NCBI GenBank assembly: GCA_964057225.1
Contig: OZ059897.1
Span: 5,890,001 to 5,954,000, forward strand
Source of the DNA: Auanema rhodensis
Taxonomy: Eukaryota > Animalia > Nematoda
Length of the DNA stretch: 64,000 bases
Reading direction: 5' to 3'
In this document: piece by piece, positions 28,058 through 56,400 of the stretch
Numbering within the stretch: the stretch's first letter is position 1
Layout: every line of letters starts with the position of its first letter
Translations under genes and position numbers: made by a program
The notes under the pieces: generated by a model
Seen by the model: the letters and a program-made list of their open reading frames with translations, nothing else
Told to the model about the DNA's origin: nothing
Databases searched by the model: none

Positions 28058-29174
28058 CTAGCGTCTGTATCCAGGAGCAGTTCTTGGTGGTGGACAGTGG
28101 TCGCATCCTCCGTGGCTTCCTTGAGCTCCATTTTCTCCTGGGATTCCATCATGTCCTGGGGATCCTGGAACTCCGTTGTCTCCGGCATCTCCAGCTGGTC
28201 CTTGTTCTCCGTCAAGTCCTGGTTGTCCACAAAGTCCCTTCTCTCCGGCTGGTCCTGGTGGTCCTGGTGGTCCTGGTGGTCCGGAACGTCCTGGTGGTCC
28301 TGGAAGAGAGATGACCTCTCCGTCTGGTCCTGGAGCTCCATTGTCTCCTGGAAGTCCATCTTCTCCTTGTGGTCCGATTGGTCCGTTTGGTCCTGGGAGT
28401 CCTTGAACTCCTGGAAGTCCTGGCTCTCCGTCCATTCCTGGCTTTCCGTTTGGTCCCTTTGGTCCTGGAGCTCCTGGTGGTCCAGCTGGGGCGTCTGGGC
28501 AGGTGAAGCATGGCTCGACTTCGATTTCCTTAGAATCATCTTCAGAATCAGCTCCTGGGCGTCCTGGGTTTCCTGGGTTTCCGTCTCTTCCTGGAAGTCC
28601 ATCAACTCCTGGAAGTCCAGCAATTCCTGGAGCTCCAGTTCCGCAAGAGCAGCATTGAGCTTGACGAGAGCGACGAGTACTCTTTGCAACACGGTGGCTG
28701 AGTCCAACTGCAAAAGTATAGTTAGTGAATCAAAGAAGAAAATAAAGTTTAAAAGGAATGTATGAAAACATACAGTGTTTGCTATGAACGGAACGCTTGT
28801 CAAGGATCTTTGCTTGTTGTCCTTTGGCTTCAGCTACGATTTCATATTGCTTATGAAGTCCTTCGGAGCGATGAACGCAGAATTCAACCTATAAAATGAA
28901 AATTTGTTAGAAAATTCACTTTATCTGAACTAAACCTCGGATTGGAGTTGGGATTGAACATGTTGCATATAGTTGTAAAGAGATGGAACAGCAACAATAG
29001 CTATCAAAGTAGCTACAATACTGAAACAAGAAAATTGAATATTGAATTGAATAGTAAAAACAAATCAGAAGAGAAAATGATTCAGAACTAATAGTACCTG
29101 ACGGTTACTCCAATGACGGCAGTGCGTCTGAGATTTTCGGCTTCCCGAAGAAGTTGCTGATCCTTAGAAGACAT
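28058..29174 (-). CDS. Nematode cuticle collagen, 308 aa, 4 exons (29174-29098, 29020-28936, 28888-28774, 28707-28058)
   Basis: GT-AG introns of 77, 47 and 66 nt give a continuous frame: [58 protein letters not shown] (Col_cuticle_N with TM segment), RRSR furin-type site, CCSCG, Gly-X-Y blocks interrupted by CFTC, and C-terminal [21 protein letters not shown] on minus at 28001-28006. Confidence 0.97.
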
Positions 29175-29214
29175 AGCTGATGCTACCTGTACAGTTGCAA
29201 TATTCAAGCCAACC

Positions 29215-29221
29215 TTATATA
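29215..29221 (-). promoter_or_regulatory. TATA box of the collagen gene
   Basis: TATATAA about 40 nt upstream of the ATG. GATA sites (TGATAG, TGATAA) lie within about 100 nt further upstream. Confidence 0.7.
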
Positions 29222-30780
29222 GAAATGGTTAGGTGAAACGGTTCCAGCAGCCTACTTCAGTTAGGTGATAGCCAAAAAAGCTTCGTCAGTCTCTTGCACG
29301 TACAACATATGTTGATAAAAACGAACAAAAACTCTTCCTGATTCTGTTTGCTTCAGTGTATTCGCGTGGTATTTGCGTCGATATATTAAGATTTTGGGCA
29401 TTTTCTAACATTCGTACGAACGCTTTTACGTTTCATAATAATTATTGGAATGTTTTTTCTCTCTATCTCTCTCTCTCTGTATCATTTTCTCTTTCCCTCT
29501 TAAGATTATCATTCTTTTTTTAAAAACTCAAATCATGTTTTTCCATATCTGTAGTACTACAAATTTCAAAAAAAAAAAGGAAGTCTTTGCACAATTATAC
29601 AAATTCAACCTTTTTATGCTGAATGCACGAAGAGTGCTGTTTGCATACTAGTAGAATTTTCTATGAAAAGCAAGGCTTTTTCAGCTTTTTTCTGGGTAAT
29701 TTTCGAGTAGATCATACCTTTTGTGAACCTGATTCATCTAGCACTTTGTCTTAGTAGAAAAAAAAAAAGATTCAACCGTACGAAATAGGAAGTAGAAAAT
29801 TATTTAATAAAAAAAAAAGTTTTATAAGAAAACTCGTTATCATATAAATAAGTTATATAAAGTTGAAACAGTACAATATGCTATCATTACTATTCAATGG
29901 TTTTTAAATAAAATAAAAGTTTTTATTTCAATCTAATTGACGACATGAAAATCATTTTTGCCGTATATAAATTCACACAACAACAAGTGTGAACTTCAGT
30001 TTAGCCAACTTGTGAGTTACTACCAGCCTATCTATCATCAAGTAATATTGTCTTTAATTATATTTTCATTATATTTTAACTATTCGTTTATAATATTATA
30101 TTATTTCCAAGTTTTTTTAATATTATTTTCAGATTTTTATTAATTTGAATATTCTTCATTTAACAACAAAAAATAACTTTTATTAAATTTTATATCATCA
30201 TCATGGCTATAAACATGGCAATATTCTAGAATAATTCATTAAAATAGAGATCATATTAGATGAGCATGAGCAAAATCCTTTGAAAGAAACTGAAATAAAT
30301 GATAAATTATGAGAAAAAATATTATTTCTATTACCTTATATTCAATATATATTCATGAATTATGAACAATGTAAACACAGGTGTATACATATAATTACAG
30401 ATTTTCTAAAAAAAAATTAAAATAATTTCAGTAAAATCTAAATAAATTTTTGAAAAAAAATATAATATTGTTAATTATATGTTTATTATTATTATGTTTT
30501 ATCTTTTTATATTTAATTTAAAGAAAATGAACAAACCAGTTTCTGGTATTTCATTCAAATTTACAGCTTGTGGGATGATGAATGATCTGATTATAAATAA
30601 TGTTATAATCGGTATTAAAGCTGCTGAAGATTGAAGTTCATATAGTATATAGAATAGAAGTTCCATCTCTATAAGATTAAAATTATATTTTGGAAAACTA
30701 TAAAATCTATCAGTTTTTTTTTTTCAAAACGAAGAACAGAAAACCACAAAATTATAAGAGGATTATGCTAAATAAACGAG

Positions 30781-40363: not shown

Positions 40364-40435
40364 ATTGGAGGCGGAGCATAGGCGGAGTCTTGAGAGCTCC
40401 TTATAAAGGCAAAATTCGCATACATACAGCAGTTC
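40364..40435 (+). promoter_or_regulatory. Core promoter of micropeptide gene P1: ATTGG, two GC boxes, TATA, Inr-like CAGTT
   Basis: GGCGGAG at 40370-40376 and 40381-40387, TATAAA at 40402-40407, CAGTT about 29 nt downstream (A at 40431). No ATG before 40539. Confidence 0.75.
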
Positions 40436-40538
40436 ATTAAAGCTTTCGTTCAACTATATTACAGTCAAGTGTATTGTTCACTTAACTCTCTAATATTTAC
40501 GCGATTATACTATCACCATCATCTGAATTACATTCACT

Positions 40539-40646
40539 ATGGTACATATCTCTTGGTCAACTGATGCTGATCTTCAAACTCGACCAGTTCGATTTGCTCG
40601 ATTGGCAGTTCGAACATCTGCTCAACTAGCTCAATTCTCTAACTAA
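40539..40646 (+). CDS. Micropeptide P1 (35 aa), MVHI-STxADLQ family
   Basis: MVHISWSTDADLQTRPVRFARLAVRTSAQLAQFSN*. First ATG after the TATA promoter, actATGG context. 12/13 N-terminal residues identical to P2, with 8 of those 12 codons differing synonymously. Confidence 0.85.
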   Translation: MVHISWSTDADLQTRPVRFARLAVRTSAQLAQFSN

Positions 40647-43170
40647 ATCAAATGCTAGTTATTCAGAAGCGTTCAATGACATCAGCATGTCAACAGCTTC
40701 TTCTTCTACTACTAGAGGTTGTGGAATCAATGCCTCTATTATGACAAGAACATCACTAACTCTTGATTCATTTCTATACATATTTGGATATATAATCTAT
40801 TTGTATTTATATATTTGGTCTACAATTAACTATTTATTTGATCCTCATACTATGTATATATTTGGAAAAAAAAACACAAAACATCTGATATCAGTCCACA
40901 TGATCTTCATACAACTTCAACTCAGCTTCTACTCAAAATCTCAACTGTTTTCTATATTTTGATGATCTACAATCTAATTATACAATATTCCTTCTATCTG
41001 TATCGGAATCTGAAGAATCAGTATGGACAGCGCTCACACAATTGGATGTTCAATGGAACCAAAAGCTGAATCTACTTAAGCCAACTGTTCTTCCCAATAA
41101 TGGTTTCGCGGGTTTTATACTTGCAAAATGCAATGTGATGCTTTAAAACATGTAAATTAGCCCAAATGTAATATTATATTTGTTAATATATTTATATATA
41201 TATAGCATAATATGTACATATTTTGTTTTATGAACATTAATTTATAAATATTTATTTTTTTTTAATTTAGTATATGTTATTATAAAAAATAATTATATAA
41301 ACAGTAGTTACTACTATACTACTACTTATACTTATATATGAACTTTATGAACTTTATGATTCATTGAACTATATGAAAACATGAAGAATAGTTAAAATAT
41401 CAAAAGTGAAGCACAACCGTTCATCTTCATGATCTGACTGAAAATAATGAAATTGTCTGATCTCTAATAGAATGTCATAGTTTACATGTATCTGAACGTG
41501 CCAAAGTACTAGCTATGATCTAAAGATTGCACCGTAATCTCTTAGTTCACTTGCAGCAATTCTTTTCAATTTTGCAAATTTATAGCTTTTCTAAGCGGTT
41601 AATCAAATTGTCTTCGTTCACTTTATCCATTATAATAACAAAATATATTTAAAATATACTGCTTAAAAGCAAAATTTCATATAGATTAAGTATATTTTAT
41701 AGAGCTAACCATATACAGCTCTGGATTGTTTTTCAGAACAATTTGAGCTCGAACAGATAATCACATATAACATTGAGTTGTTTTGCGTATAAGAAACAGA
41801 ACAGTTTTCGAATTAAATCGTCAAAATTACAAAGATTCAGATATTTAAACCCCAACTAATTTATTGTCTATCAATCTTTTTATGAAAAAAAAGTTCGGAA
41901 AATGTGATATTAATTGAAATTTTTATCAGAATTTCCGCTTGTATTTTTCAAAGACATAAGAGAGTGTTGAACCACGTGTTAAAACTTTATCTGAAAATTC
42001 TTTGCTAGACTATGCAGTTACATACGCTTTTTCCATCAATTTACTATGTCTGAGTGTTATCATATTTCTTATCAAACGTAATCCAAATGAATCCTATATA
42101 TATATTCATTGTCTGAGTTAAGAGAGACTGTTAAGAGAGGAGCAAAGTAAAGTAAAGCAAAATAAAAAGAAAATTATTCTTATAATTTACCCTATAAGTA
42201 TAATATATTTGAAATACATGTGTATATTCAATCTTAAAGGTTTATACGTTTTCAAAGAGTTCTTTTAGATAGATTTGCTCTAGTTGAATCATACTTACGT
42301 CAGTAGAGAATTTAAAAAGTAAAAACATGGCTTAAAGATATTTAAAAAATTTTCAAAATACGATCTGAACAAGTTATGATTTGCACAAAATCTGAGCTGG
42401 TCTTAGTATAAGATTAGATATGTTTTTCAGAACAATTTCGGTTGATTTTAATGCTGATCCATAAGCTTGATCTGAAAATTTCAGTTTTGGACATTGGCAT
42501 GTTGACAATGAACAAAACTCAAAATTGTGCTTATAAATACTTCGATCTTTCAATCTAATTATCGTTTATTCTTTGGAATAATTCATAAATTTATAGTGAA
42601 AACACTACAAGATTCACCGAAGCCCATAATTCATAGAATGTACTACCATCCGAACTATTTTTTTTTCGCAAAAAATTGTCCGAAAGATACAGAAACTCCA
42701 AAATTTTCATATCTATATATTCATTTTTCTTATTTCAATTAAAATATATAAGATTTGCATCATCAAGTTTGAAAATAAAAAAAATTGAAATTGGGGGAAA
42801 GGAAAACGTTTTTCATGCTAAGTTGAAGAAGAACTCGTCATCAGATCTGTCATCAAAAAATAGATAACAAAGTATAATGTAAATGACTTAATTATGATAT
42901 AAGAATACACATTTACGTATCAAAATTGGAAAGTGAGTTCTATAATAGGCAATGTCGATACAGCATGTTTTACGTGGAAACTAACTAATGATAGTGAAAT
43001 GTTTCTAGTTTGCTTATGAATCAGTGAAGATGTTTCATACATGTATATCTATGTAACGATTATTTTGAACTAAAGTTGAATATTTTAACAACTTTTTCAA
43101 GAGCATGATAATAGCTTATAGCCTGTATTTGTTAATAATACATCGGTGAGCCAATCCTTTCAGTCAAAAC

Positions 43171-43275
43171 ATGCTGGATTATGGAGTAGAGAAGCTAGCT
43201 AAAGGATTTTTGACATTAAATCCTATAGTCTTGTATGAAGACCTCCATACTGAATTTGGTCAAGAAGATATTTAA
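43171..43275 (+). CDS. Candidate 34-aa small ORF or terminal exon
   Basis: TTTCAG|tcaaaacATG, then MLDYGVEKLAKGFLTLNPIVLYEDLHTEFGQEDI*. No homologue in the window. Confidence 0.25.
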   Translation: MLDYGVEKLAKGFLTLNPIVLYEDLHTEFGQEDI

Positions 43276-43485
43276 ATTGATTGAATATTCTATTTTTTCA
43301 ATTTCAAGATTATAGTCTTAGTAAATTCCACGTGAGATAAACTACGAAAGACATGTAGAGGTCCAGAAAAGAACAACATGGAAAATCTGAAAGGATGGAG
43401 AATTAAAATGAAAAATGAAGAAAAGATAGAAGTGAGAAGTTAAGTGGGAAAGAGTAAAATCTTAGTTAGATGGAGAAGTTTGTTT

Positions 43486-43487
<2 letters not shown>

Positions 43488-43539
<52 letters not shown>
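43488..43539. repeat. (AG)n microsatellite
   Basis: About 26 perfect units. Confidence 0.95.
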
Positions 43540-43540
<1 letters not shown>

Positions 43541-45792
43541 AGCTCATGAACTACATTTCAAAATATCCTACTTTATTGTATTATTACTTGATATATAGAA
43601 AGAACTAACTTTTAAAATGTTTCGAAAAACATGTAACTACATATCTATTATCATCTTAACTATTGTATTTTTGAATTATTAATAGAATTTTCATAAAGAT
43701 TTGGCCAAAGACCTCATCAGAAACTAAAATAGAAGAAAAAATTTATAAAAAGTTTGAAGACTTTCAAATCATTGTAAATGAGTCATACATCATGCAAGAT
43801 TGATGCTTATAAGACTAGTGATATCATATACTATATACGTATAATCATCTGAAACCATATATTTAAATTTAAAAAAAACTTTCTTTTTTTTTTCATTTAA
43901 TCTCTTAATAATACTACAATTCAAATATAATTTAAGTTTCATTATTATTTAATATTTTGGAAATTGAATTCATTTTTCAAATAAAACTTTAAAGGAACTG
44001 CATGTCTGTTAAACGCCAAATTCAGCTTTTCCTTTCATCCTTCCTGAAGGAAATGAAGATTTTCAGATTAACGTAATAGTATTATTAATTTATTTTAATT
44101 TAATTATAATTTAGATATAGCAATATCCGTATATCCTTTATCATATCATATTCCTGTTCCTGTTTTGAGCGTAAACCGATTGATAATGTTTTGAAATTGT
44201 ACGTTCAATATTGAAACAGCATAGATACAACAACGATGCACAAATTTTTAAGAATAAGTTGAAATACACTTCTTAGTTTATGTTTTCATCCCTCAATAAC
44301 GTTTTTTGGAATAAAATAAAAAGTTCAAAATTAAAATTTACTTTTCTTTCATGCACACACACATACATACACGCGTTTGACGTTTTTTTTACTATCTTTG
44401 TACTTCAAAATCAGACAGTGATAAGAAGTGATCATGTGCAATTCGTCGAAGTCTTTGAAAACGTTTTTGCACAAAAAAAAAAGTCAAAAATAAACTTTGA
44501 AAATTGAAAAACAAACAGATTTTCATTCATTTTTTTCTTCATTTATTTATTATACTATATAACTATACAATATAATTATAATGAAGTTCAAACATATACA
44601 TGCTACGTCATTCTATTTATAATTAATGGATGGTAAGATTTTTTTTTGTAATTGATTGAGAAAAAGAAAACTTTTTTTTATTTTCTTCAACAAAAGTCAA
44701 ACTTTTCGAAAAAAGAACCGATGCGAGAGACATACTTTCTATATACGAGAGAGATGATTTTTGAAATTCAAAATCTTTTTTGGTGTTTTTTTTTATTTTG
44801 AAATGGAGAGTTACCTCATCATTTCATGCCACATGAAAGAACATGAAAAGCCATCCATCGTCTTGTTATTATTGATGTGATTAATGCTTTTGTACACGTT
44901 TTTCATAGCTGGATAACTAACTACTTTGATAATCCTCATATATCAGCTGGTTTTGACTCCATGGATAGATTATAATCTCAGTTATGCATGCTTGTAACTG
45001 TGATATGAAAAGCTGATCAATGACTGCGACAACTATTCGGCAGCCGTTTGAATTTTGCATCATTAGACTAGTATACCAGTGATACTACAAGAATATCAAG
45101 AAATATCATCAAACATGAAGGATTTAAGCTTGAATCTCTATCAACTAATACTACAATGTTCTAAAGAATATGATTGCTTTCGTATATGTATCAAAGTTTA
45201 TAAGTCAGTCTCACTCATTCAATCACTCATTCAATCACTCACTAACTCACACACTCATTCACATACTCATTTCCTTCATTTGAATTGTTATTGGCGACAA
45301 AAATTCTTTATTACTTACCTTTGATTATCTATGTTAAAGACATTAACACAATAACAAATCAACTTCAGAAAAGCAAGACGGGGCGACGACGAAGAAGAGA
45401 TCATCATACTCATACACCACTACTTCCTACGACTAAGACCACTACTACAACTCTCCCCCCACCCAAACACCTTTATTCCAACCTTTTTTGTGTTCTTCTC
45501 TCCAGTCGGTAGTACTCGTCTGACGACGATACATACTTTTTGTGAGAATTTGCACGAAAAGACGAAGACTGCTGCTGGTGGCGCTTGTGTGTTCTGTGTG
45601 GACAAGCTAAACGTCGTGGCATAGTACTACATCAGCAACTACTACTTGTCAACAACTCGACCAGATCTATAGCCAATAGTGGACCATTTGTAATATTCGT
45701 TCATCTACAGAATTATATTCGAATTCTCACGTTGATTTTTACTAAATTTTGTGGAAGAAGAAAAAACTTTTACAGTTTAAACAGTGTAAACT

Positions 45793-45939
45793 ATGATTCA
45801 CATTACTTATTCGACATCAGCTGATCTTCAGTCTCGTTTTGATCTAAAATATTCACGAAGAACTCGATTGAAACTACGTTGCGAGCATCTTCAAAAGAAC
45901 AATAATACATTAAATGTTTTCTCTACAACAGAAGAATGA
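45793..45939 (+). CDS. Micropeptide P3 (48 aa), MVHI-STxADLQ family
   Basis: MIHITYSTSADLQSRFDLKYSRRTRLKLRCEHLQKNNNTLNVFSTTEE*. 10/13 N-terminal residues identical to P2. TTTTACAG at 45768-45775 just upstream; AATAAA at 46055-46060. Confidence 0.78.
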   Translation: MIHITYSTSADLQSRFDLKYSRRTRLKLRCEHLQKNNNTLNVFSTTEE

Positions 45940-47578
45940 ATGTCTTGTATTCTAAGTATTATAGGATGGAAATAGTCGCCAATTAATTCTTAGGACAGAT
46001 TGATCAACTTCATCAATTAAAAACAGAACAATTTCATATTTTCTCAGTTCAATTAATAAAACATTTTGAGTTCTAGTTATAATAATCTGTATGATTTAAT
46101 ATATTTAATTTGTTATATAAATATCTGTATATATGTATATAGATTTATTTATATATATTTGTTGTATTTTAATGAATGTTTTTGTATATTATATTCTTAG
46201 ACTCAATCATATTACAAGGTATAGAGAGAGAGAGAGAGAGATAGATAGATAGATAGGTAGAGAAAGAGAGATAGAAAGAGAGAGAGAGACAGATAGAGTT
46301 AGAGATTTTAAGAAAGAAATATGAAGAGATGAACATAAAAACCAGAAAAAACCTCTTTTCTACAGTATTTACTCTGAATCTCATAATACATATTTATATT
46401 AAAATAAGATTCAATACTATAAGTTTCTTTTTTTTTTTTGAAAATAGTACATCGTTACATCTTGAAATCCTTGTTCATGTTTGAAAACTTTTAAATTATA
46501 TCTTATAAGTACACGATTATACTAGATAATAAAGCTGAATATTAAACTATATATGTATTTGAGAATCAAATGAACCCTCGAGTCAAATTGATCTGATACA
46601 GTATCATCAGATCAGATGAAAAAATAACAGATGCACATGCATGGAATCCTAAAATGATTATGAATGTCAGGTGTTTGACCTTTTTGTCTCTTCATCTTCC
46701 AATTTGTTTACTTCCTTTTGTTTTAATGTCTGCTTCTACTTTACCTTCTTAATCATTTTCTTCTACTTTAGATCTTTTTCTTTTCTTGTTCAAATATATA
46801 AAATCATGAGAAATACATTATGACCAACTGATACACATCTATCTGATTATCATACTGATATGATTTTACTCATTTTTTAACAAAAATTTATTATTTTGTT
46901 TATTTGAACTAATGAAAGGAAAGAATTTATATGGAAATGAGAGATCAAAGGAAATAAAGAGAGAAATAGTCACATGAAGAGAGATAGAGGGATAGAGAGA
47001 CAAGAGTTTGTGTCTCATTATCTTGCTTCTGATCTCTCACATCTTTAAGCTTCCTGTTCTTGTTTTTTTTATTTTTTTTGCATCATTTCACAAACAAATA
47101 AAAAAAAAGTTTATAATACAATATAAAATAATATGTATTGAACTAATATTATCAAATATTTGAAACAAAACAAACAAAAATGATGCTAAGAAGACAAAAG
47201 AAAAAACAACTTAAGATAAATTTTATTTTATGAAAACTTTAAATAATCATAGAAATTGTAAAAGATATTATAACAAATACATTCATATATCCTTAATCTT
47301 ATGAAGAATTCTTAATTCCATATTAAAAAGTTTTAAACTTTTTCTGAACTTTCAATTAGATCAATTTAACATAGAAGAGAGTAATTCGGATTTTTTTTCA
47401 ATCTACTCTAAGCTTTAATCATTTTGAATTCATATTTTTGGTGAAAAAAAAAGATTTTCTAATCTGATATATTCAAACATATGCTTCTTTCTTGTACATT
47501 CAAATATTAGAACAAAGGCTAATTATGTTTAATATCATCTCTCTCTCTCTTTCTCTCTCTCTATCTCCCTCTCTTTCT

Positions 47579-47627
<49 letters not shown>

Positions 47628-49275
47628 GACTGATATATTATTGGTTTTCTTTTCTCATTTCATACAAGACTATTTAAGAATAAAAAGGAGAAAATAGTTA
47701 GTTTATCATTCAAATGAATGATTTTCTTCATAACACCTATTTAGTAGATTCACACAAAGATGAGATTTTTCCTCTTAATAACTTCTTCAACTATGATCCA
47801 TTTCGTAAACTATCTCCCATCATCTAGTAAGATAAGAAATAAATTTGTAATCATTTATGTATTTTACACATGATAGACCTATTTGATTAGACATGTGATT
47901 GGGAAGACTTCCTGAACAACTCTTGAATGTGCGATAAATCTTATACCGTTTGTAAACTTTTTTCTCTTCATCTCCCTCTATTTCTCTTCTTTTTGTTTCT
48001 CTTTGTACCTTTCACAATTTTAATTGTTATTTCTTTCTAGCTTGTGTAGTCAGAAGATTGCTACAACAAACTGTTAGGGCGTCTCATTTTCTTGGACCAC
48101 AAAATACATTCATATGTATATGTATATACATATGTATATATACATATAATCTATATAAAGATTATTAATTCTTTTATAAATGTCTTGAAGATGAAACATT
48201 AACTAAAATATATAATTTTATTAAATAATAAAATTACAGTAAGATTTATATATTATTAAAGTTTATTATAATACAAGCTTAAATATGTCTGAATGATCTT
48301 AACTATATACTGGAAAACATGAAAAATACTTCTTTCTTCTATAGATTCTAAAAAGAGAAATTAAGATTACAAACAAATGAATTTACAGCATTTTTTTTAG
48401 GAATAAAGAGTTACAAATATTTGGAAAAATCCAAGTTACTTATAAGTAAATAGAATAAGTTTTTTTTGACTTAAATGGTAAGTACAAACGAAAAATCATA
48501 TATTAGACTCAAATATATAAATTATAAATATATAGAGATATATAGATAAACTTTTAAATTTTAAATATATTAAATCTCTTTATATACACAATATTTATAT
48601 ATAATAATCTTTAATATTATATTTTTCTTTTTTTCAACATACAGATATCCTTTACTATAATCCATAATTATATACTTTGATTTAAGAGGTTTTAAGTATA
48701 GTCATCTAATTGTATTTCAATAGTCTTGGATTTATAAGATGAATTATAGAAAATACATCAGGCTGCATAATATTTTTTCAATATTTTAAGTACGATTAAC
48801 ATAAGATTTAAGCTCACAAAATTCATATTTCATATGTTTTATAGATTTTAATTATTATTCTTGAATGAATAATCTTTTCGGATTTTCAAGTTCAACATAT
48901 TAGCTTGTGAAAGAAACTTTATAAATTTTAAATAAACTATATGATATTATTAATGAATTTGGTATTCTTTTTGATATAAATTGTTCTTATAATTCCTTAT
49001 ATTATTATTATTTTTATAAAAAAAATTTTCATTTTCATTCATTCATTCATCAGTTTACTGAACAAACGTACTAGTCATTTTATAGCTATTTTTGGGACTT
49101 TTTCTCATAGCAATGACATTACTCATTGAAAGAAAAACTGGTAGAGTAAGCAGTAATATGAGATAGAGACAGCACATAAGTGATATGGAGGTTCGAGGTT
49201 GTTGAAAGAACAGGAGACTAAGGGAAAGCAGTGAGGTCATAACAGAGTTCAGCAATCTCCATGTGCAAAGACAGT

Positions 49276-49283
49276 TGACGTCA
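49276..49283. promoter_or_regulatory. Full CRE palindrome TGACGTCA between P3 and P2
   Basis: Exact 8-bp CREB/ATF site in a locally GC-richer island; function not shown. Confidence 0.3.
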
Positions 49284-50711
49284 GCATTAACTTCCGTTTT
49301 AAAAGATTCTATTTTTGGAAGCTGATTCCTATAGAACGAGTGTATGTGTGTATGTGTGTTGGACCACATCAAACTGAACTAGATTTACATCTGGAAATTT
49401 AATTTTTTTTCTTTGCATTCAATTATAAGAAGATAAAAAGAAAATAGAAGTAAAATGACAAAAAAAATTTGTATTTGTCTTAAGATGATTATCTAAACAT
49501 ACAAGAAGCCAGAGATAGGGAGTTGTAGTAGTAGTAGAAGTAGAAATCATCAGACACAAGCCATTTGTTAGCATTTATGATGATGTGATATTGAAGCTGA
49601 TGTTGTCAGTTTTTAGAAGATGATCAAGTCTGGCTTCAACTTGAAAAGTTTTTTCTCACAAATCTTGTAGATTTAAAAGGAGTGAGAGAGAGATCATAAA
49701 AGAGAAAGAGGTTTGTACATATAACTCTCATCCTCTAATACCATCTGTTTTAAATTTTTTCAGAAGTTGTAGTATGAGATGAAGAAGCATATTCTCTTGA
49801 AGCCATAGTAAATCTCAAAACTATAGTACTAAGCTGATTAATATAGTGAATTATGGTATTAACTGTTCGAACAAAAAGCAAAAAGGTAGAAGACTACATT
49901 GATTAAATTGTTTTTTTTTTAATTTTCATATTGTTTAGTAATCAAAGAGGGAGAGAATGAATTACATTCATACATAGGGTTTCTCTCTTCTTCATCTCAA
50001 GAATCATTTTAATGAGATTTTCTTTTGTAAAACAAACATTATTTGTTGATATTTTAAACTAAAAATAAAAGTTGTTAAATTAGAAATGTAAATAAATATT
50101 TTTTTTTATTCAGATATTATTTTTTCTTTTATTAAAACTTGGAAGTAAGCGTGAGTAAGCTTGTTAGCCAGCTTTACTTTCAATGCAAGTACAACCTTGT
50201 TCAGCAAATCATATTCGTTAAATAAGATATTATGGTATAAATAGACAAAAGATAAATATAAGAAATAGTCTTTATACGATAATTGTAAATAAAAAAACAA
50301 ATGCTCTACAAGACTTGAACTTGATGTGTGATTGCGAGGGAGGACAATAACAAAGCAGAGACTGGAAATGTAATGTTTGGTAGATATGTATGAGTAAGAT
50401 TTTTTTTTTTGCGTTTTTTAGTGTTGATTCATAAGGAAAAAAAGTAATTTTATTCTTTTTTTTTGTATTTAATGTTCCTTTACTAGTTTATTCTTGTTTT
50501 GAAAGCAATAAATTATAACGATGTTTCGATGGTTAGTCGACGTAATGATTCAGAATCTTCATTAGAATCTAGCTATTCCTTCTTCTTAGGATCAAAATTA
50601 TGAAGCTAATATAATAATAAGAAATCAAAGAAGTAAATCTTTTTCTTTCCCTTCTTTTTTTGTCTTGTGCACACCTGAATTCTACAGATTTGCAAGGAAG
50701 GGAAAGAAAAG

Positions 50712-50719
<8 letters not shown>

Positions 50720-50768
<49 letters not shown>
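50720..50768. repeat. (AG)n microsatellite
   Basis: About 24 perfect units. Confidence 0.95.
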
Positions 50769-50774
<6 letters not shown>

Positions 50775-51458
50775 GAGTTGTAATATCACTGTTCTATATT
50801 TTGTATTTTCTATATTTATGCTGTATATGTATGTATAGTAATAGTAGTAGTAAGTAGTACTTGAGAAAAAAATGACAAATAAGGTTATTTTTAGTTTAAA
50901 ATAGATTTATTATTATAGTATTTACAATGAAATTCATCTATCTATAAGATATACATATTATATACACATCACATGTGTTTTCAATAAAATATAACATAAT
51001 ATATAAACAGATCATTATAAGTTTTAAGTTAAAGCTGTTGATCCAAACTCGTCGTTGGCTGAGATATAGTATCAGAGTTGATAAAATGAGAGAATGAGTG
51101 ACCCGTGCTCATACCATGCTGCGACTTCTTCCATTCAACATATTCTGTCTATATGTTGGCTTCTTCGGTCCTGTGACTTCAATAGTTGGTTGATGTCTCG
51201 ATAGGTAATAAGTCGAATATCATAGCCAGAATAAAAGACATGAAGCTTCTTGTACCAGCATAATTAGACAATGTATAGTATATTTAGAATTATAGATAGC
51301 TGGATATAAGAATATGTCATGAGTTGACTAGATATGTACAGAGAATGTTAGATCTTTAGATGATCTGTAGTACTACCTCGCAGAACGTTGCAGAAGAACG
51401 TTGAGTACATTAGCAGTAGAATCCATCTGAATCCAGATCAGTGTCCATCATATAGTGT

Positions 51459-51560
51459 TCATTTGTCCGTTCGGTTCAATCGAGAGAATCGGCTCGGTCG
51501 ATGAATGGACGTGGAGAATGCCTGCAAGTCGGCATCAGTAGACCATGTAATGTGAACCAT
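51459..51560 (-). CDS. Micropeptide P2 (33 aa), MVHI-STxADLQ family
   Basis: MVHITWSTDADLQAFSTSIHRPSRFSRLNRTDK*. First ATG after the TATA promoter; differs from P1 by a frame-preserving 6-codon indel before RPxRFxRL. Confidence 0.85.
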   Translation of the reverse strand: MVHITWSTDADLQAFSTSIHRPSRFSRLNRTDK

Positions 51561-51699
51561 ATTGGAAGCAGTAAGTTAGTTAGCAAATTTATGCGTTTTG
51601 TCAATAAAAACAGAAGTGAACGCTGTAGAGAGAGTTTGAGAGAGATAGAGTGTTACGCTCAAAGGTTTGAGAGTATAAGCGTGCGAACAAGCTCAGGAA

Positions 51700-51811
51700 A
51701 GGCTGCCCACATTCGGAGATTCTCCGATTTTATATCTGCTGATAGGCTCCGCCCCTTCGCCCCTCCCCTTCCGCCGTCCCCCTACTCTGCAAAGAGAAAA
51801 TGACGTCATTT
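51700..51811 (-). promoter_or_regulatory. Core promoter of P2: CRE, GC boxes, TATA
   Basis: 14-bp palindrome AAATGACGTCATTT (51798-51811), G-rich boxes at 51746-51782 including GGGGCGGAGC, TATAAAA at 51734-51728, and an Inr-like GCAG about 30 nt downstream. Confidence 0.78.
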
Positions 51812-53485
51812 GCCTCTAGAATCATCGCTAAAACGATTCTTGAGGTCAAACGACGATGACGAAGGGTTAAGAGAAGATGAAACAGTCATCCATGTATTGG
51901 TACAAGATCAAATGTTTATGTTTGCTGTAGACTAACTGCAGAAAAACTGTTTTTCCACGTTGTATATACATACTTAGTATATTCAGGTCTCATCAAATTC
52001 ATATTGAAGTTGTGTTAGACTTGTCACTTCGTATCATTGAGATGATAAGAAAGAATGATATATTATGTTCAAAAAATAAAAGTTAAAAGCACAGTCTTCT
52101 ATCTGAATTCCCTTGTTCATTCGTGTATCTGCTGGAATTTTCTGTGGATTTCGATAGAAACGAGATAACTTCCCTCATATTCTAGAGTCTTTCGTAATCT
52201 GTTTGCTAAACTCCCGGACAACAATGCGACAAATGGCTACTCACTTCAAATGTGCGAATTTGTGCGAAAAAACGGAACAAAATTGTCATGTTGTGTTGGC
52301 TGTTGACGGTTTCATCAGACCTCTGTAAGGCACACTTATCATACTAAGCTGCAGGTAGTGGTCAGCTATTAAGCTCGATTCGAGTTGTATTACACACAGG
52401 GTGGTCATACCTGATCATCAGATATCATTGAAAGCTTTGCTGTTATCTCTGCAGTAGTCGTACGACTTATCAGTGCTTCATGAAGCATATTTCATGATAT
52501 AGCGATTGCAACGAATGAGCTATAGCTTTTGCGTCAACTATCATCTCCTGAACATGGAGAGCTGAATGATTTTACAATGTTTCGCCATAATTCGAAACAA
52601 TTGGCGTTGTGATAGCGCTCCAATTCCACCTTGTATGGTCAAGATTATAACAAACAAATAGTTGCAAAACGCACGTGAAAGCTTGATCATCTATATCATT
52701 TGTAGAAAAATAAAATTAATACCGTCTCCTTTTCGTGCAGTCTCAGAGTACAGCATAGCATAGCAGGTGACAGCAACATTAGAAAAATGTTACAAGGTTC
52801 TAATACAAAAAGAAAAAGTAGAAATTTTATATAAAAGGGTAAAATTAATATTTTCTTTTTTGTGAGAGTATATATGATCTTCGAGACTGGTTATACCATC
52901 TATGTGTATATTATGGACAAATTTAGATCTTAAAACAAAAAAAAGTGATCAAGTTGGTTCAAGAAGATGGATTGAACACACGTGCCTCTGTCACTGCACT
53001 TCTAGGGGTGAATTGAAAACTAAGTAGTTTCCCACTTTTATTGATAATCATAGATGAAATTCTTCTTTTCTTTTCTTTTTTCTTTTTCGTGTCTTCTATT
53101 TCCTAGTTTTGCCATGATTTTTCGAATTTTGGAACTGCTCCCGATTCATATATCTTTTGAATGTTTAGACCTCTAAACGAACGTTTTAAACAAGAACCCA
53201 TACTTGATCTTGCCACTTTTTGATCTGACAGCGTATGTGTGATCAGAGACTTTTTCCTGGACGCGGCTGTTATAAGGTTAATGATATAGTTTATGATTGT
53301 CCTCTTGGTAGTTTGTGATATGTGTTTGGCCTGTCTATATGAAGAATATAGAAGAGACGATTGTTATTCATAAATCAGACGGTGTCCTGACAACATATCA
53401 ACGTGGTACATGAATCTCATGTATACAACACCGCTGTCAGAATAAAAAATATGGGGGTAAGACGGATGGAAAGTCGGGGGGGGGG

Positions 53486-53499
53486 GGGGTTGTCAATAT
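53486..53499 (+). repeat. Poly-G tract (G14)
   Basis: Homopolymer run. Shorter G/C runs at about 3882-3895, 5334-5345 and 9010-9019. Confidence 0.85.
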
Positions 53500-56400
53500 G
53501 ATCATCTGACGTTGAAAAGCTATCAGAAGGCGATGTCATCTCTAGATGTCGTCGTCTTTTTGTGTTCTACCTTTCTTCAGTCATATGGTTCTCTCATTTT
53601 CTGATTTGTTGGGTTTTTGTCACACATATAAAGTGTCATGTTGTTGAATCTAGAAGAGCTGCTACTAATTCTGAACATATGTAGTTTTCAGTACGGGAAA
53701 GACCTCCAAAAAGCAGAACTAATTCACTAATGAAGAGAAAATACACATAATGATGTCATAGTTTCTCAGCAAAAAAATAGTTTTTCTTTCAGGCCATGCT
53801 TTTCTAACATATGTAACGAATGATGATAATGCGAAAAATCGTCAAATGATGAAATGGATGTTCAATTTAAAACATTTCGAATTAGATAGATAGGATGTGA
53901 TTGTGAGACGAAAGCGACTAGATGATCATCGTAAGTTGCAACACATCATGTTAAAGAGCGAAGATGATGACTATGACTATGGCGACGACATCTTTGTGTG
54001 GTCTAGCATCCATCTCATTAATGTGATTTTACCACCTTTCTTGTGTTTTATCCCCTTTTGCGTTAAATTTATTCTTCAATTTGTATTTCGTAGAAAAGGA
54101 GGGATGACGTCCAATTTCGCAATCGGTCTCTCGTTACAACCCGGACAAGAGAGAAAGAGAGAGAACTAAACAGATAGCTGTGACTGTCGCTATCATCTAT
54201 GTACATCGTCATCTTAATCATCATTTCTCATCGTCATCGTCGTCTTAAAATCTCGTCGTTCTTTATCACTTTTGTCTTATTGGTGTAAGCGTCCAAGTTG
54301 TTGTATTCTATCTTGGCCAATTGCAACTGTTTGGCAACATTAGTACAAGAGTCAGAAGTCGATCAAGTTGTACTCAGTTGATCAAATATTAAACATTTTG
54401 CAAACGGTGGTCGTATACCTTGGAAGAAAGGTTTGAAAAGCTGTCCAGTTACATCATGCTTAAGAATATGAATCATTACTGCTCTTATCTGTATATGTAT
54501 ATCAATGGAAACTAGAATGTTGGAATACCAGAACAATCATGATATGTGTGCTTCCTGCTCTGTGTCTGCTCAGCCATGTAGCTTATAATGCTCTTCATAA
54601 AGTAATAAGGAACAATGAAGTAATAAACGAATAGTTCAAATTTTCTCTTGTCATTCTACGTATAAACGGTTTAATTTGCTAATTTATACAATACAAAGCA
54701 TGCATTTTTCATAAAAATCCTATTTCAACAAGCATATGCTTGTATACACAGACATACAAGCTCTCTGGTTTTCGACCAAAAAGATGCTCTTGTTATTAGT
54801 TATTTATTCAGAAGATTCTTTTTTGAGGATAACCGATTAGAATACATGATGAATTGAGATTTATCAAGAATCATCCATTCTATTCGATCAAAAGTCGAAT
54901 TAGGAATTATCATTATTATCGAAGGATTGAGAAAACCGTGGAAGATGGTAGCTGTCTACTAGTTCAGATAGAAAATGCTTTATCGCAGTTTCAATGGTGT
55001 TGTTTTTCTATTTATTACTTGGAAACTTTCTGAAAAAAAGGAGATGAGAAGATTTGTATTCATTATAAAGATTATCTCAAAGTTTTTATTCTTTTTGAGA
55101 AATATCACAAAAAAAACATTAAGTTTTCAGCAAGAGAGATTCGCCTAATATACGCTCTTTGAATTATGGACTTTATCTATCGTAAGACGCTTGACCTTTA
55201 CAAAAGAAAATCTCTTCTAAAACTCAGCATTTAAGAGAAAAAGCAGAGAAGATGGAGTTCTTGTAATTTGCTTTCTTCATTGTTTGCACAAACAATAAAA
55301 AAAAAGAAAAAAATAATTCCTGAAGAAAAGAAGATAAAAGAATATCTGCGGAGAAGAAGGAAGAAATAGTATGATGAGAGTAAACTATTGAATAATAAGG
55401 AAACAGTTCCAGACATATTCGTAACAATTGTTCCAAAAAAGAAAAAAAATAACAAAAAGGAGGGAGGAAGGGACTTGTACAGGAGATGGCTGAAAATCAG
55501 TAGTATGAAGCTTCACATAGTTTATAGGATCACATCTTGTTGATCAAATGGACAATAGGGTCAAAATCAATTAGTTTTCAACTTTTTGTTGATTTTTTGA
55601 AAACATAAAGGATATTCGAACATATATCTCTCATCTAATGCTTATGTTTGAAATTTTGCCAAGGTTGTATGTCAAGTTGACAAGAAAAAGTGATTGTGTT
55701 TGTTCTCGTCTCCGAACACATTCCACATCATAGTCATGATTTTCATCTGAGAAGTTTATTTGATGTTGACCATTCTAAACAAAATAAAATGAAAAAATGT
55801 GGAAAAAATACAAAGAATAAGGTTATTTATTTGTCTTAAGTATAACATATGTACTGTTTGCGGGGGAGTGAAAGGGAAGCAGCTCGTTTATTCAATTTCT
55901 CAAACGCTTTCTTTTCAATTCTCCAGATTACGTGTGAGCAGAGGCACACGATGGCTTTCTTTTGCAACGCTAAAACACAACACATCATCACCCGTCTATA
56001 TTTGTATTTTGTTAGTTTGTTGTTGAGATACCTATTATCTGACATATTTTGAGAAAAACGAAGAATGGGGACAATGAGACTGGAAAACTAGCAAAAAAGA
56101 AATCCGATTAATGATATGAGCACAAATAAAATAGTTATCTGGAACATGGAGTCATCACATAGTTAACTCTTAACTATTTGCTAGTATATATGATCAAAGT
56201 ACAGAGCTGAATCTTCACATATTAAGACTATCAAATAGTTTTCAAACAAGAAAGTGGCGCATTCCTTGAGAAATAATGCTTCTTATGGACCTGCAAAAGG
56301 ATAGTATATGGTGGTGAGAATTGAATATGAGCTGTTTTCAAGTGGACTTTCTACTTTTCACATTGTTTGATCATCTTATTCATCGTGTTCGTCAAATTTT

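What the first reader, a model, noticed from the sequence alone, without database searches (positions are those of the whole stretch)
40539..51560. Hidden three-gene family of conserved micropeptides (M[VI]HI[ST][WY]STxADLQ...RxxRL)
Seen in sequence: three sub-50-aa ORFs missed by the ORF track. P1 40539-40646(+) MVHISWSTDADLQTRPVRFARLAVRTSAQLAQFSN; P3 45793-45939(+) MIHITYSTSADLQSRFDLKYSRRTRLKLRC...; P2 51560-51459(-) MVHITWSTDADLQAFSTSIHRPSRFSRLNRTDK. P1 and P2 share 12/13 N-terminal residues, yet 8 of those 12 codons differ synonymously (GTA/GTT, CAT/CAC, ATC/ATT, TCA/TCT, GCT/GCC, GAT/GAC, CTT/TTG, CAA/CAG). The indel between them is exactly 6 codons, and flanking DNA is largely unalignable. 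Each ATG is the first after a promoter or acceptor-like site. Inference: old paralogues under purifying selection on the peptide, i.e. real micropeptide genes likely to be missed or mis-called as lncRNA. I do not recognise the family, but I cannot exclude that it is already annotated.
Basis: partly seen in the sequence, partly recalled or inferred. Interest (0 to 1): 0.92.

Follow-up and report, generated by a model that had tools for sequence, protein, structure and literature searches.

The report
Three-gene micropeptide family in Auanema
Three tiny stand-alone genes (33-48 codons) in a gene-poor stretch of a nematode chromosome encode related basic peptides whose amino acids have stayed the same while the DNA drifted, so they look like real, unrecognised small-protein genes, though expression and function remain untested.

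Summary
Three ORFs of 35, 48 and 33 codons start with M[VI]HI[ST][WY]STxADLQ and share a later RxxRxxRL block. The motif occurs nowhere else in the six frames of the 64-kb window.

P1 and P2 differ at 11 of 39 bases in the N-terminal block. Nine differences are at third codon positions and only one residue changes (permutation P < 5e-5). The flanks are almost unalignable.

Each ATG has an in-frame stop 2-6 codons upstream and an A at -3. Each ends an unusually long ATG-free leader (181, 462, 152 nt; window median 31). Rare GC-box motifs lie upstream of all three, about 20 nt before a TATA box at P1 and P2. No usable splice donor follows the conserved part, and no further shared exon lies nearby.

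My reading is a local cluster of old paralogous single-exon micropeptide genes, with no signal peptide and no membrane segment. No relative turned up, but the searches cannot see nematode genomes or 13-residue matches, so neither conservation beyond this genome nor transcription could be tested. How the peptides work (a docking strand plus an arginine-rich helix binding a partner) is inference only.

It is a new family of a known kind and moderately interesting.

The parts
40539..40646 (+). P1: 35-codon ORF (MVHISWSTDADLQ ... RPVRFARL ...)
   Evidence: in-frame stop 5 codons upstream; A at -3
40370..40387 (+). P1 promoter: two GGCGGAG GC-box motifs
   Evidence: GGCGGAG occurs 3 times in 64 kb (0.28 expected), all upstream of P1 or P2 on the sense strand
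40402..40408 (+). P1 TATA box (TATAAAG), 137 nt before the ATG and 21 nt after the second GC box
40430..41270 (+). Inferred P1 transcription unit of about 0.8 kb. It is a GC island with C>G on the sense strand and has no poly(A)-signal-like hexamer for 596 nt after the stop; the first TATAAA is at 41243.
   Evidence: inference, not shown
45793..45939 (+). P3: 48-codon ORF (MIHITYSTSADLQ ... KYSRRTRL ...), the most diverged copy
   Evidence: in-frame stop 2 codons upstream; A at -3
45768..45775 (+). P3 acceptor-like TTTTACAG 17 nt before the ATG (a possible trans-splice site); no TATA box
   Evidence: inference
45380..45385 (+). GGGGCG GC-box motif at the start of the 462-nt ATG-free leader of P3
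46055..46060 (+). AATAAA 116 nt after the P3 stop
51459..51560 (-). P2: 33-codon ORF (MVHITWSTDADLQ ... RPSRFSRL ...)
   Evidence: in-frame stop 6 codons upstream; A at -3
51747..51763 (-). P2 promoter: GGGGCG x2 overlapping GGCGGAG (GC boxes)
51728..51734 (-). P2 TATA box (TATAAAA), 174 nt before the ATG and 19 nt after the GC box
50906..50911 (-). First AATAAA after the P2 stop (+548 nt). It coincides with the end of the GC island and implies a unit of about 0.8 kb.
   Evidence: inference

Best explanation
P1, P2 and P3 are three old, locally duplicated, single-exon protein-coding micro-genes of an Auanema-type rhabditid nematode. Each appears to have its own RNA polymerase II promoter: GC box plus TATA for P1 and P2, and a GC box plus a probable trans-splice acceptor for P3. 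In each, the micropeptide ATG is the first ATG of the transcript.

The products are 33-48-residue, basic (pI 9.5-11.5), soluble peptides with no signal peptide and no membrane segment. Selection has kept two parts: an N-terminal 13-mer and an arginine-stripe block RxxRxxRL(x1-2)R. Residues 2-8 of the 13-mer alternate hydrophobic and polar like a beta strand, and the next residues form a short acidic helix cap.

Shown: homology of the three ORFs, codon-level purifying selection, intact ORFs, and start-site and promoter-like context.

Inferred: the peptides act inside the cell as small binding modules. The extended N-terminal strand would dock on a conserved partner protein, and the Arg-rich helix would supply a second, electrostatic contact with an acidic surface, a kinase or phosphatase active-site groove, or RNA. 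That would make them small regulators or inhibitors rather than enzymes, secreted signals or membrane peptides.
For: - Motif uniqueness and homology.
- Selection: P1/P2 N-terminal block has 11 nt differences, split 2/0/9 by codon position, with 1 amino-acid change (pS > 0.75, pN 0.06, permutation P < 5e-5). P2/P3 and P1/P3 give P <= 0.002.
- Flanks decayed. Only a faint colinear trace remains in the P1/P2 3' regions, so the peptide has been held while neutral DNA randomised.
- Start context: in-frame stops 2-6 codons upstream. ATG-free leaders of 181, 462 and 152 nt against a window median of 31 (fractions 0.027, 0.0007, 0.052). A at -3 in all three.
- Promoters: all three GGCGGAG in the window sit 19-21 nt (and, for the first P1 copy, 32 nt) upstream of the TATA boxes of P1 and P2. 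Three of the five GGGGCG lie upstream of P2 and P3 in sense orientation.
- No GTAAGT/GTGAGT-type donor follows the conserved block (read directly). No further paralogous exon lies within about 10 kb.
- No transposon structure around the loci.
- Peptide properties. The AlphaFold model has residues 1-8 extended and helices 9-14 and 16-34, mean pLDDT 70.
Against: - No transcript, ribosome or peptide evidence could be obtained.
- No homologue was found in any collection. These searches are nearly blind here. Small ORFs are rarely called as genes, a 13-residue match cannot reach E <= 0.001 against 1.8 billion proteins, and the DNA collections hold no nematode genomes. Conservation outside this genome is therefore unknown.
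- A search with four spurious ORFs that flank or overlap the loci found no public ORF call covering them, which is a weak hint that abundant assembled transcripts are lacking.
- P1 and P2 would have unusually long 3' UTRs for a nematode (about 550-600 nt), so the RNA may do something more.
- The proposed binding mechanism rests only on residue patterns and a low-confidence model.
Confidence: 0.65

Rival explanations
1. The ORFs are conserved upstream ORFs, or 5' coding parts, of longer RNAs of about 0.8 kb or spliced RNAs. The main function would lie downstream, in a second ORF, a distant exon or a non-coding RNA body, with the peptide acting in cis on its own ribosome or message.
For: P1 and P2 sit at the 5' end of GC islands of about 0.8 kb with sense-strand C>G skew. 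Both lack poly(A)-signal-like hexamers for 596 and 547 nt after the stop (3-4% of random positions). The P1/P2 3' regions keep a faint colinear similarity (z 2.3-2.6).
Against: No downstream ORF or exon is shared between the loci in any frame. The aligned 3' stretch falls in different frames in P1 and P2 (read). Conservation is at the N-terminus and mid-peptide, and the distance to the stop varies (13, 5 and 22 residues after RL), unlike known stalling uORF peptides. P3 has an AATAAA 116 nt after its stop. No plausible splice donor follows the conserved block.
Confidence: 0.17
2. The ORFs are relics: N-terminal exons of a once larger gene family, or of a mobile-element protein. They were under selection in the past but are no longer expressed.
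For: The region is gene-poor and AT-rich (29% GC). No outside homologue or transcript-derived ORF call was found.
Against: All three ORFs are intact and keep ATG, -3 A, ATG-free leaders and promoter-like motifs, although neutral DNA around them has diverged to near randomness. Relics of that age would carry stops, frameshifts and random-position substitutions. There are no terminal repeats or other transposon marks.
Confidence: 0.1
3. The similarity reflects a DNA- or RNA-level element (a binding site or small-RNA target) or chance, not a peptide.
For: The CTCGATTG octamer of the RL block is identical in all three.
Against: 9 of the 11 P1/P2 differences are at third codon positions and 8 codons are swapped for synonymous ones, which an RNA or DNA element would not tolerate. 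tblastn E 2e-7 rules out chance. There is no Rfam or tRNA match.
Confidence: 0.03

Closest known systems
Animal micropeptide (sORF/smORF) genes found by conservation, such as the conserved-sORF sets of Mackowiak et al. 2015 (PMC4568590)
   Same: ORFs under 100 codons on short transcripts of their own. They are recognised by codon-level purifying selection and are easily missed or filed as lncRNA.
   Different: No sequence relative. The motif is absent from the text-held supplements of that catalogue and of a C. elegans non-canonical proteome. Here the selection signal comes from paralogues within one genome, not from orthologues.
PP1-docking RVxF short linear motif, [KR]-x(0,1)-[VI]-{P}-[FW] (consensus recalled from the literature), as in small PP1 regulators such as inhibitor-3/Ypi1
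   Same: HI[ST]W has the V/I-x-F/W core in a beta-strand-like stretch and is followed by acidic and then basic residues. The peptides are small and probably disordered, like PP1 inhibitors.
   Different: The basic residue is His, not Lys or Arg. The motif sits at the extreme N-terminus with no basic lead-in. P3 has Tyr in the F/W position. No binding data exist.
Pseudosubstrate-type kinase inhibitor peptides: PKI (RRNAI) and the protein kinase C pseudosubstrate RFARKGALRQKNV (both recalled from the literature)
   Same: P1 carries RFARLAVR, which resembles RFARKGALR. All three have R-[FR]-[AST]-R-L with arginines at every third residue, and the peptides are small, soluble and basic.
   Different: The spacing differs by one residue from the PKC pseudosubstrate. 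The putative acceptor position is not conserved (A, S, T). There is no PKI-type RRxAI. Sequence searches found no relation.
Conserved-peptide uORFs such as the fungal arginine attenuator peptide
   Same: A short conserved peptide encoded at the 5' end of a longer RNA.
   Different: There is no conserved main ORF downstream. Conservation is N-terminal and the distance to the stop varies.

Membership tests
Stand-alone micropeptide (sORF) gene | Intact ORF under 100 codons that starts at the first AUG of its own transcript | tested here: inconclusive
   The ORFs are intact, with in-frame stops upstream, and leaders of 152-462 nt are ATG-free. Promoter-like GC box and TATA are present. The transcript ends themselves were not observed.
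Stand-alone micropeptide (sORF) gene | Purifying selection on the amino-acid sequence | tested here: met
   P1/P2 N-terminal block: pN 0.06, synonymous sites saturated, permutation P < 5e-5. The other two pairs give P <= 0.002.
Stand-alone micropeptide (sORF) gene | Evidence of translation (ribosome footprints or peptide) | not testable with these tools
   No RNA-seq, Ribo-seq or proteome data for this genome are reachable. Exact and homology look-ups were empty.
PP1 regulator with RVxF motif | [KR]-x(0,1)-[VI]-{P}-[FW] docking motif | tested here: not met
   The sequences are VHISW, VHITW and IHITY. His stands in place of K/R, and P3 has Tyr in place of F/W. The consensus is recalled from the literature.
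PKA/PKC pseudosubstrate inhibitor | RRxA-hydrophobic (PKI) or R-K-G-A-L-R type pseudosubstrate with a conserved non-phosphorylatable acceptor | tested here: not met
   The R-[FR]-[AST]-R-L block has a variable acceptor position and a different spacing. No PDB or Pfam match.
Conserved-peptide uORF | Conserved main ORF downstream on the same mRNA, and a peptide conserved up to its stop codon | tested here: not met
   No shared downstream ORF or exon. The tails after RL are 13, 5 and 22 residues long and are not conserved.
Secreted nematode peptide families (nlp, flp, antimicrobial peptides) | N-terminal signal peptide | tested here: not met
   The highest 11-residue Kyte-Doolittle mean is 0.2-0.4, and the N-terminus is polar/aromatic and invariant.
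Membrane micropeptides (sarcolamban/DWORF type) | Single transmembrane helix | tested here: not met
   No hydrophobic segment; GRAVY is -0.14 to -0.88.
Transposon- or virus-derived ORF | Terminal repeats, multiple alignable copies, or similarity to mobile-element proteins | tested here: not met
   The only non-microsatellite repeat in 39-53 kb is the coding block itself. No relative in viral contigs.

The most novel reading that the evidence does not exclude
The three genes define a previously unknown, lineage-restricted family of intracellular regulatory micropeptides. Its invariant N-terminal strand would dock on a core enzyme such as a PP1-type phosphatase or a basophilic kinase, and its arginine helix would block or retarget that enzyme. 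It would be a new class of genetically encoded mini-inhibitor in nematodes, possibly carried on bifunctional RNAs of about 0.8 kb.
Probability: 0.12. Interest if true: 0.7.

Novelty: new member of a known kind. Interest (0 to 1): 0.45.

Why it matters
Micropeptide genes are systematically missed by annotation, and few have been supported in nematodes outside C. elegans. This cluster is a clean example in which sequence alone shows selection on a peptide of about 35 residues: three paralogues with saturated synonymous sites and decayed flanks. It gives precise targets for mass spectrometry and knock-outs in Auanema, a three-sexed worm used to study sex determination and programmed DNA elimination. 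If the peptides prove to be docking inhibitors of a conserved enzyme, the 13-residue motif would be a new short linear motif. On present evidence it is only a well-supported gene call without a function.

Tried and rejected
- Exact look-up of the three peptides and of ten neighbouring ORFs in the 15-billion-protein collection: none present.
- Word-indexed homology search with the three-peptide alignment: no candidate.
- Full HMMER scan of 1.84 billion representatives: one hit, a 543-residue tandem-repeat protein that scores only by summing 8 weak stretches, so spurious.
- Degenerate DNA pattern scan and the search for related loci on metagenome contigs: nothing. Viral contigs: nothing.
- Prokaryote genomes: one 17-residue chance match inside a Paenibacillus reading frame. 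It lacks ADLQ and the basic block.
- Synteny route to a sister species via the neighbouring cuticle collagen: the best hits are only 54-59% identical and from distant nematodes, so no orthologous locus could be fetched.
- Pseudo-alignment of four spurious ORFs flanking or overlapping the loci, meant to catch public contigs or transcripts of the same species: no hit.
- Pfam on ten other stop-free stretches of the window, to find anchor genes: nothing usable.
- Rfam, tRNA scan, Pfam and PDB on the loci and peptides: nothing. A weak ssDNA_DBD match for P3 is below threshold.
- Literature full-text search and two supplement searches for the motif: nothing relevant.
- A pol III (U6-type PSE plus TATA) reading of the promoters. 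I dropped it because P2 has a T5 run before its ORF, P1 has no T4 for 537 nt, and the leaders are not conserved.
Full report
**What is there.** The window is AT-rich (29% GC) nematode DNA. Its only recognisable conventional gene is a cuticle collagen at 28.06-29.23 kb on the minus strand. Earlier notes of this scan place the genome in Auanema; I did not test that.

The three ORFs are at the stated coordinates:
- P1, 40539-40646 (+), 35 codons.
- P3, 45793-45939 (+), 48 codons.
- P2, 51459-51560 (-), 33 codons.

All three begin M[VI]HI[ST][WY]ST[DS]ADLQ. After a linker of 1-8 residues they share an RxxRxxRL block followed by another Arg.

**More than chance.** ADLQ and [VI]HI[ST][WYF]ST occur only at these three sites in all six frames. 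I searched every stop-free segment of 36-56 kb against the window with tblastn. Only these three ORFs matched each other (P1/P2 E 2e-7), apart from a few borderline chance pairs. A profile of the three finds no fourth or degenerate copy in the window.

**Selection on the peptide.** In the first 13 codons P1 and P2 differ at 11 of 39 bases, split 2/0/9 by codon position. Eight codons are exchanged for synonymous ones and one residue changes (Ser/Thr).
- The proportion of synonymous differences exceeds the saturation limit, while pN is 0.06.
- Placing 11 random substitutions never gave one or fewer amino-acid changes in 20,000 trials.
- For the N-terminal block, P1/P3 gives P = 0.002 and P2/P3 gave no such trial in 20,000.
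- The basic block is looser. Its signal is the invariant Arg/Arg/Leu positions rather than a low dN/dS.

Outside the ORFs the three loci do not align under strict scoring. With permissive scoring only the P1/P2 3' regions keep a faint colinear trace (z 2.3-2.6). So the whole unit was duplicated long ago, neutral sequence has almost randomised, and the peptide has been held. An RNA- or DNA-level element cannot explain third-position wobble.

**Complete, stand-alone ORFs.**
- Each ATG has an in-frame stop 2-6 codons upstream and an A at -3.
- The upstream ATG-free runs are 181, 462 and 152 nt, against a window median of 31. Only 2.7%, 0.07% and 5.2% of all ATG-to-ATG gaps are that long. This is the expected mark of leaders scanned by ribosomes.
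- After the conserved block there is no GTAAGT/GTGAGT-type donor, and the three tails end at different stops.
- No other shared exon exists nearby, and there are no transposon hallmarks.

**Promoter-like context.**
- GGCGGAG occurs three times in 64 kb (0.28 expected). All three are on the sense strand upstream of P1 (twice) and P2.
- The copy nearest each TATA box lies 21 nt (P1) and 19 nt (P2) before it. The TATA boxes lie 137 and 174 nt before the ATGs.
- GGGGCG occurs five times. Three are upstream of P2 (twice) and P3, again in sense orientation.
- P3 has no TATA box. It has a TTTTACAG acceptor 17 nt before its ATG and an AATAAA 116 nt after its stop, which fits a trans-spliced message.
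- P1 and P2 sit at the 5' ends of GC islands of about 0.8 kb with C>G on the sense strand. They lack poly(A)-signal-like hexamers for 596 and 547 nt after the stop. I read this as transcripts of about 0.8 kb with long 3' UTRs. This is inference.

**The peptides.** They are basic (pI 9.5-11.5) and hydrophilic, with no hydrophobic segment that could serve as a signal peptide or membrane helix.
- Residues 2-8 alternate hydrophobic and polar, with a beta-type hydrophobic moment of about 0.5 against 0.1 for a helix.
- An AlphaFold model of P1 with the three-sequence alignment leaves residues 1-8 extended and makes helices 9-14 and 16-34, at modest confidence (mean pLDDT 70).
- The arginines recur every third residue, which would line one face of a helix.

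**Mechanism (inferred).** The most economical reading is a soluble intracellular binding peptide: an invariant N-terminal strand that docks by beta-strand addition, plus an Arg-rich helix as a second contact. Two concrete models were considered.
- The PP1 RVxF motif, as suggested by another first-stage note, fits only partly. His replaces Lys/Arg, and P3 has Tyr in the Phe/Trp position.
- A kinase pseudosubstrate is suggested by RFARLAVR in P1, which resembles the PKC pseudosubstrate RFARKGALR. The spacing and the acceptor position are not conserved.

Neither membership test is met, and both consensus motifs are from memory. I therefore commit only to 'small docking regulator', at low confidence.

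**Outside evidence.** None could be obtained.
- The peptides and neighbouring ORFs are not in the protein collection.
- Homology searches were empty or spurious.
- DNA scans of metagenome and viral contigs found nothing, and the prokaryote-genome scan found only a chance match.
- The collagen neighbour gave no close orthologue to anchor synteny.
- A search built to catch any public ORF call over these loci was empty.

These blanks carry little weight. Small ORFs are seldom called as genes, a 13-residue match cannot pass the E-value cut-off in a library of 1.8 billion proteins, and no nematode genome DNA is searchable here. The motif is absent from the held supplements of a conserved-sORF catalogue and of a C. 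elegans non-canonical proteome, and from Pfam and PDB.

**Verdict.** This is a new, unnamed family of a known kind (micropeptide genes), with function unknown and expression untested.

The main rival has about one chance in six. It holds that the ORF is the 5' part of a longer functional RNA, which would explain the long PAS-free 3' regions of P1 and P2. Relic and non-coding readings are unlikely.

Noticed in passing
window 28061-29228 (-): A multi-exon nematode cuticle collagen gene (Col_cuticle_N plus collagen repeats). Its best database relatives are only 54-59% identical and come from distant nematodes. It is the only recognisable conventional gene I found in the window.
   Followed up: partly
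window 40476-40483 (+) and 51614-51621 (-): P1 and P2 share the octamer GTTCACTT at nearly the same distance from the ATG (-63 and -61). In each case it lies just after a TACAG acceptor-like site. It may be a conserved leader element or trans-splice site, or chance.
   Followed up: no
window 51800-54500: A GC-richer stretch (33-41% GC) directly upstream of P2 on the other strand, with several open segments (such as 51810-51935 + and 53894-54166 +). It may be a gene transcribed divergently from the P2 GC-box region. No Pfam match.
   Followed up: partly
window 43480-43540, 46217-46330, 47530-47630, 50700-50775: Long (GA)n/(CT)n microsatellites recur through the cluster, and similar runs are seen across the whole window. 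Two of them lie about 280 and 690 nt downstream of P3 and P2.
   Followed up: no
window 51501-51803 (+): A 100-codon ORF runs antisense across the P2 start, leader and promoter. It has no homologue or domain and probably stays open only because the region is GC-rich.
   Followed up: partly
L001:3001-3051: A Paenibacillus tundrae contig encodes MVHITYSTSVTLQQ inside a longer frame. It is a chance resemblance to the N-terminal motif, without ADLQ or the basic block.
   Followed up: yes
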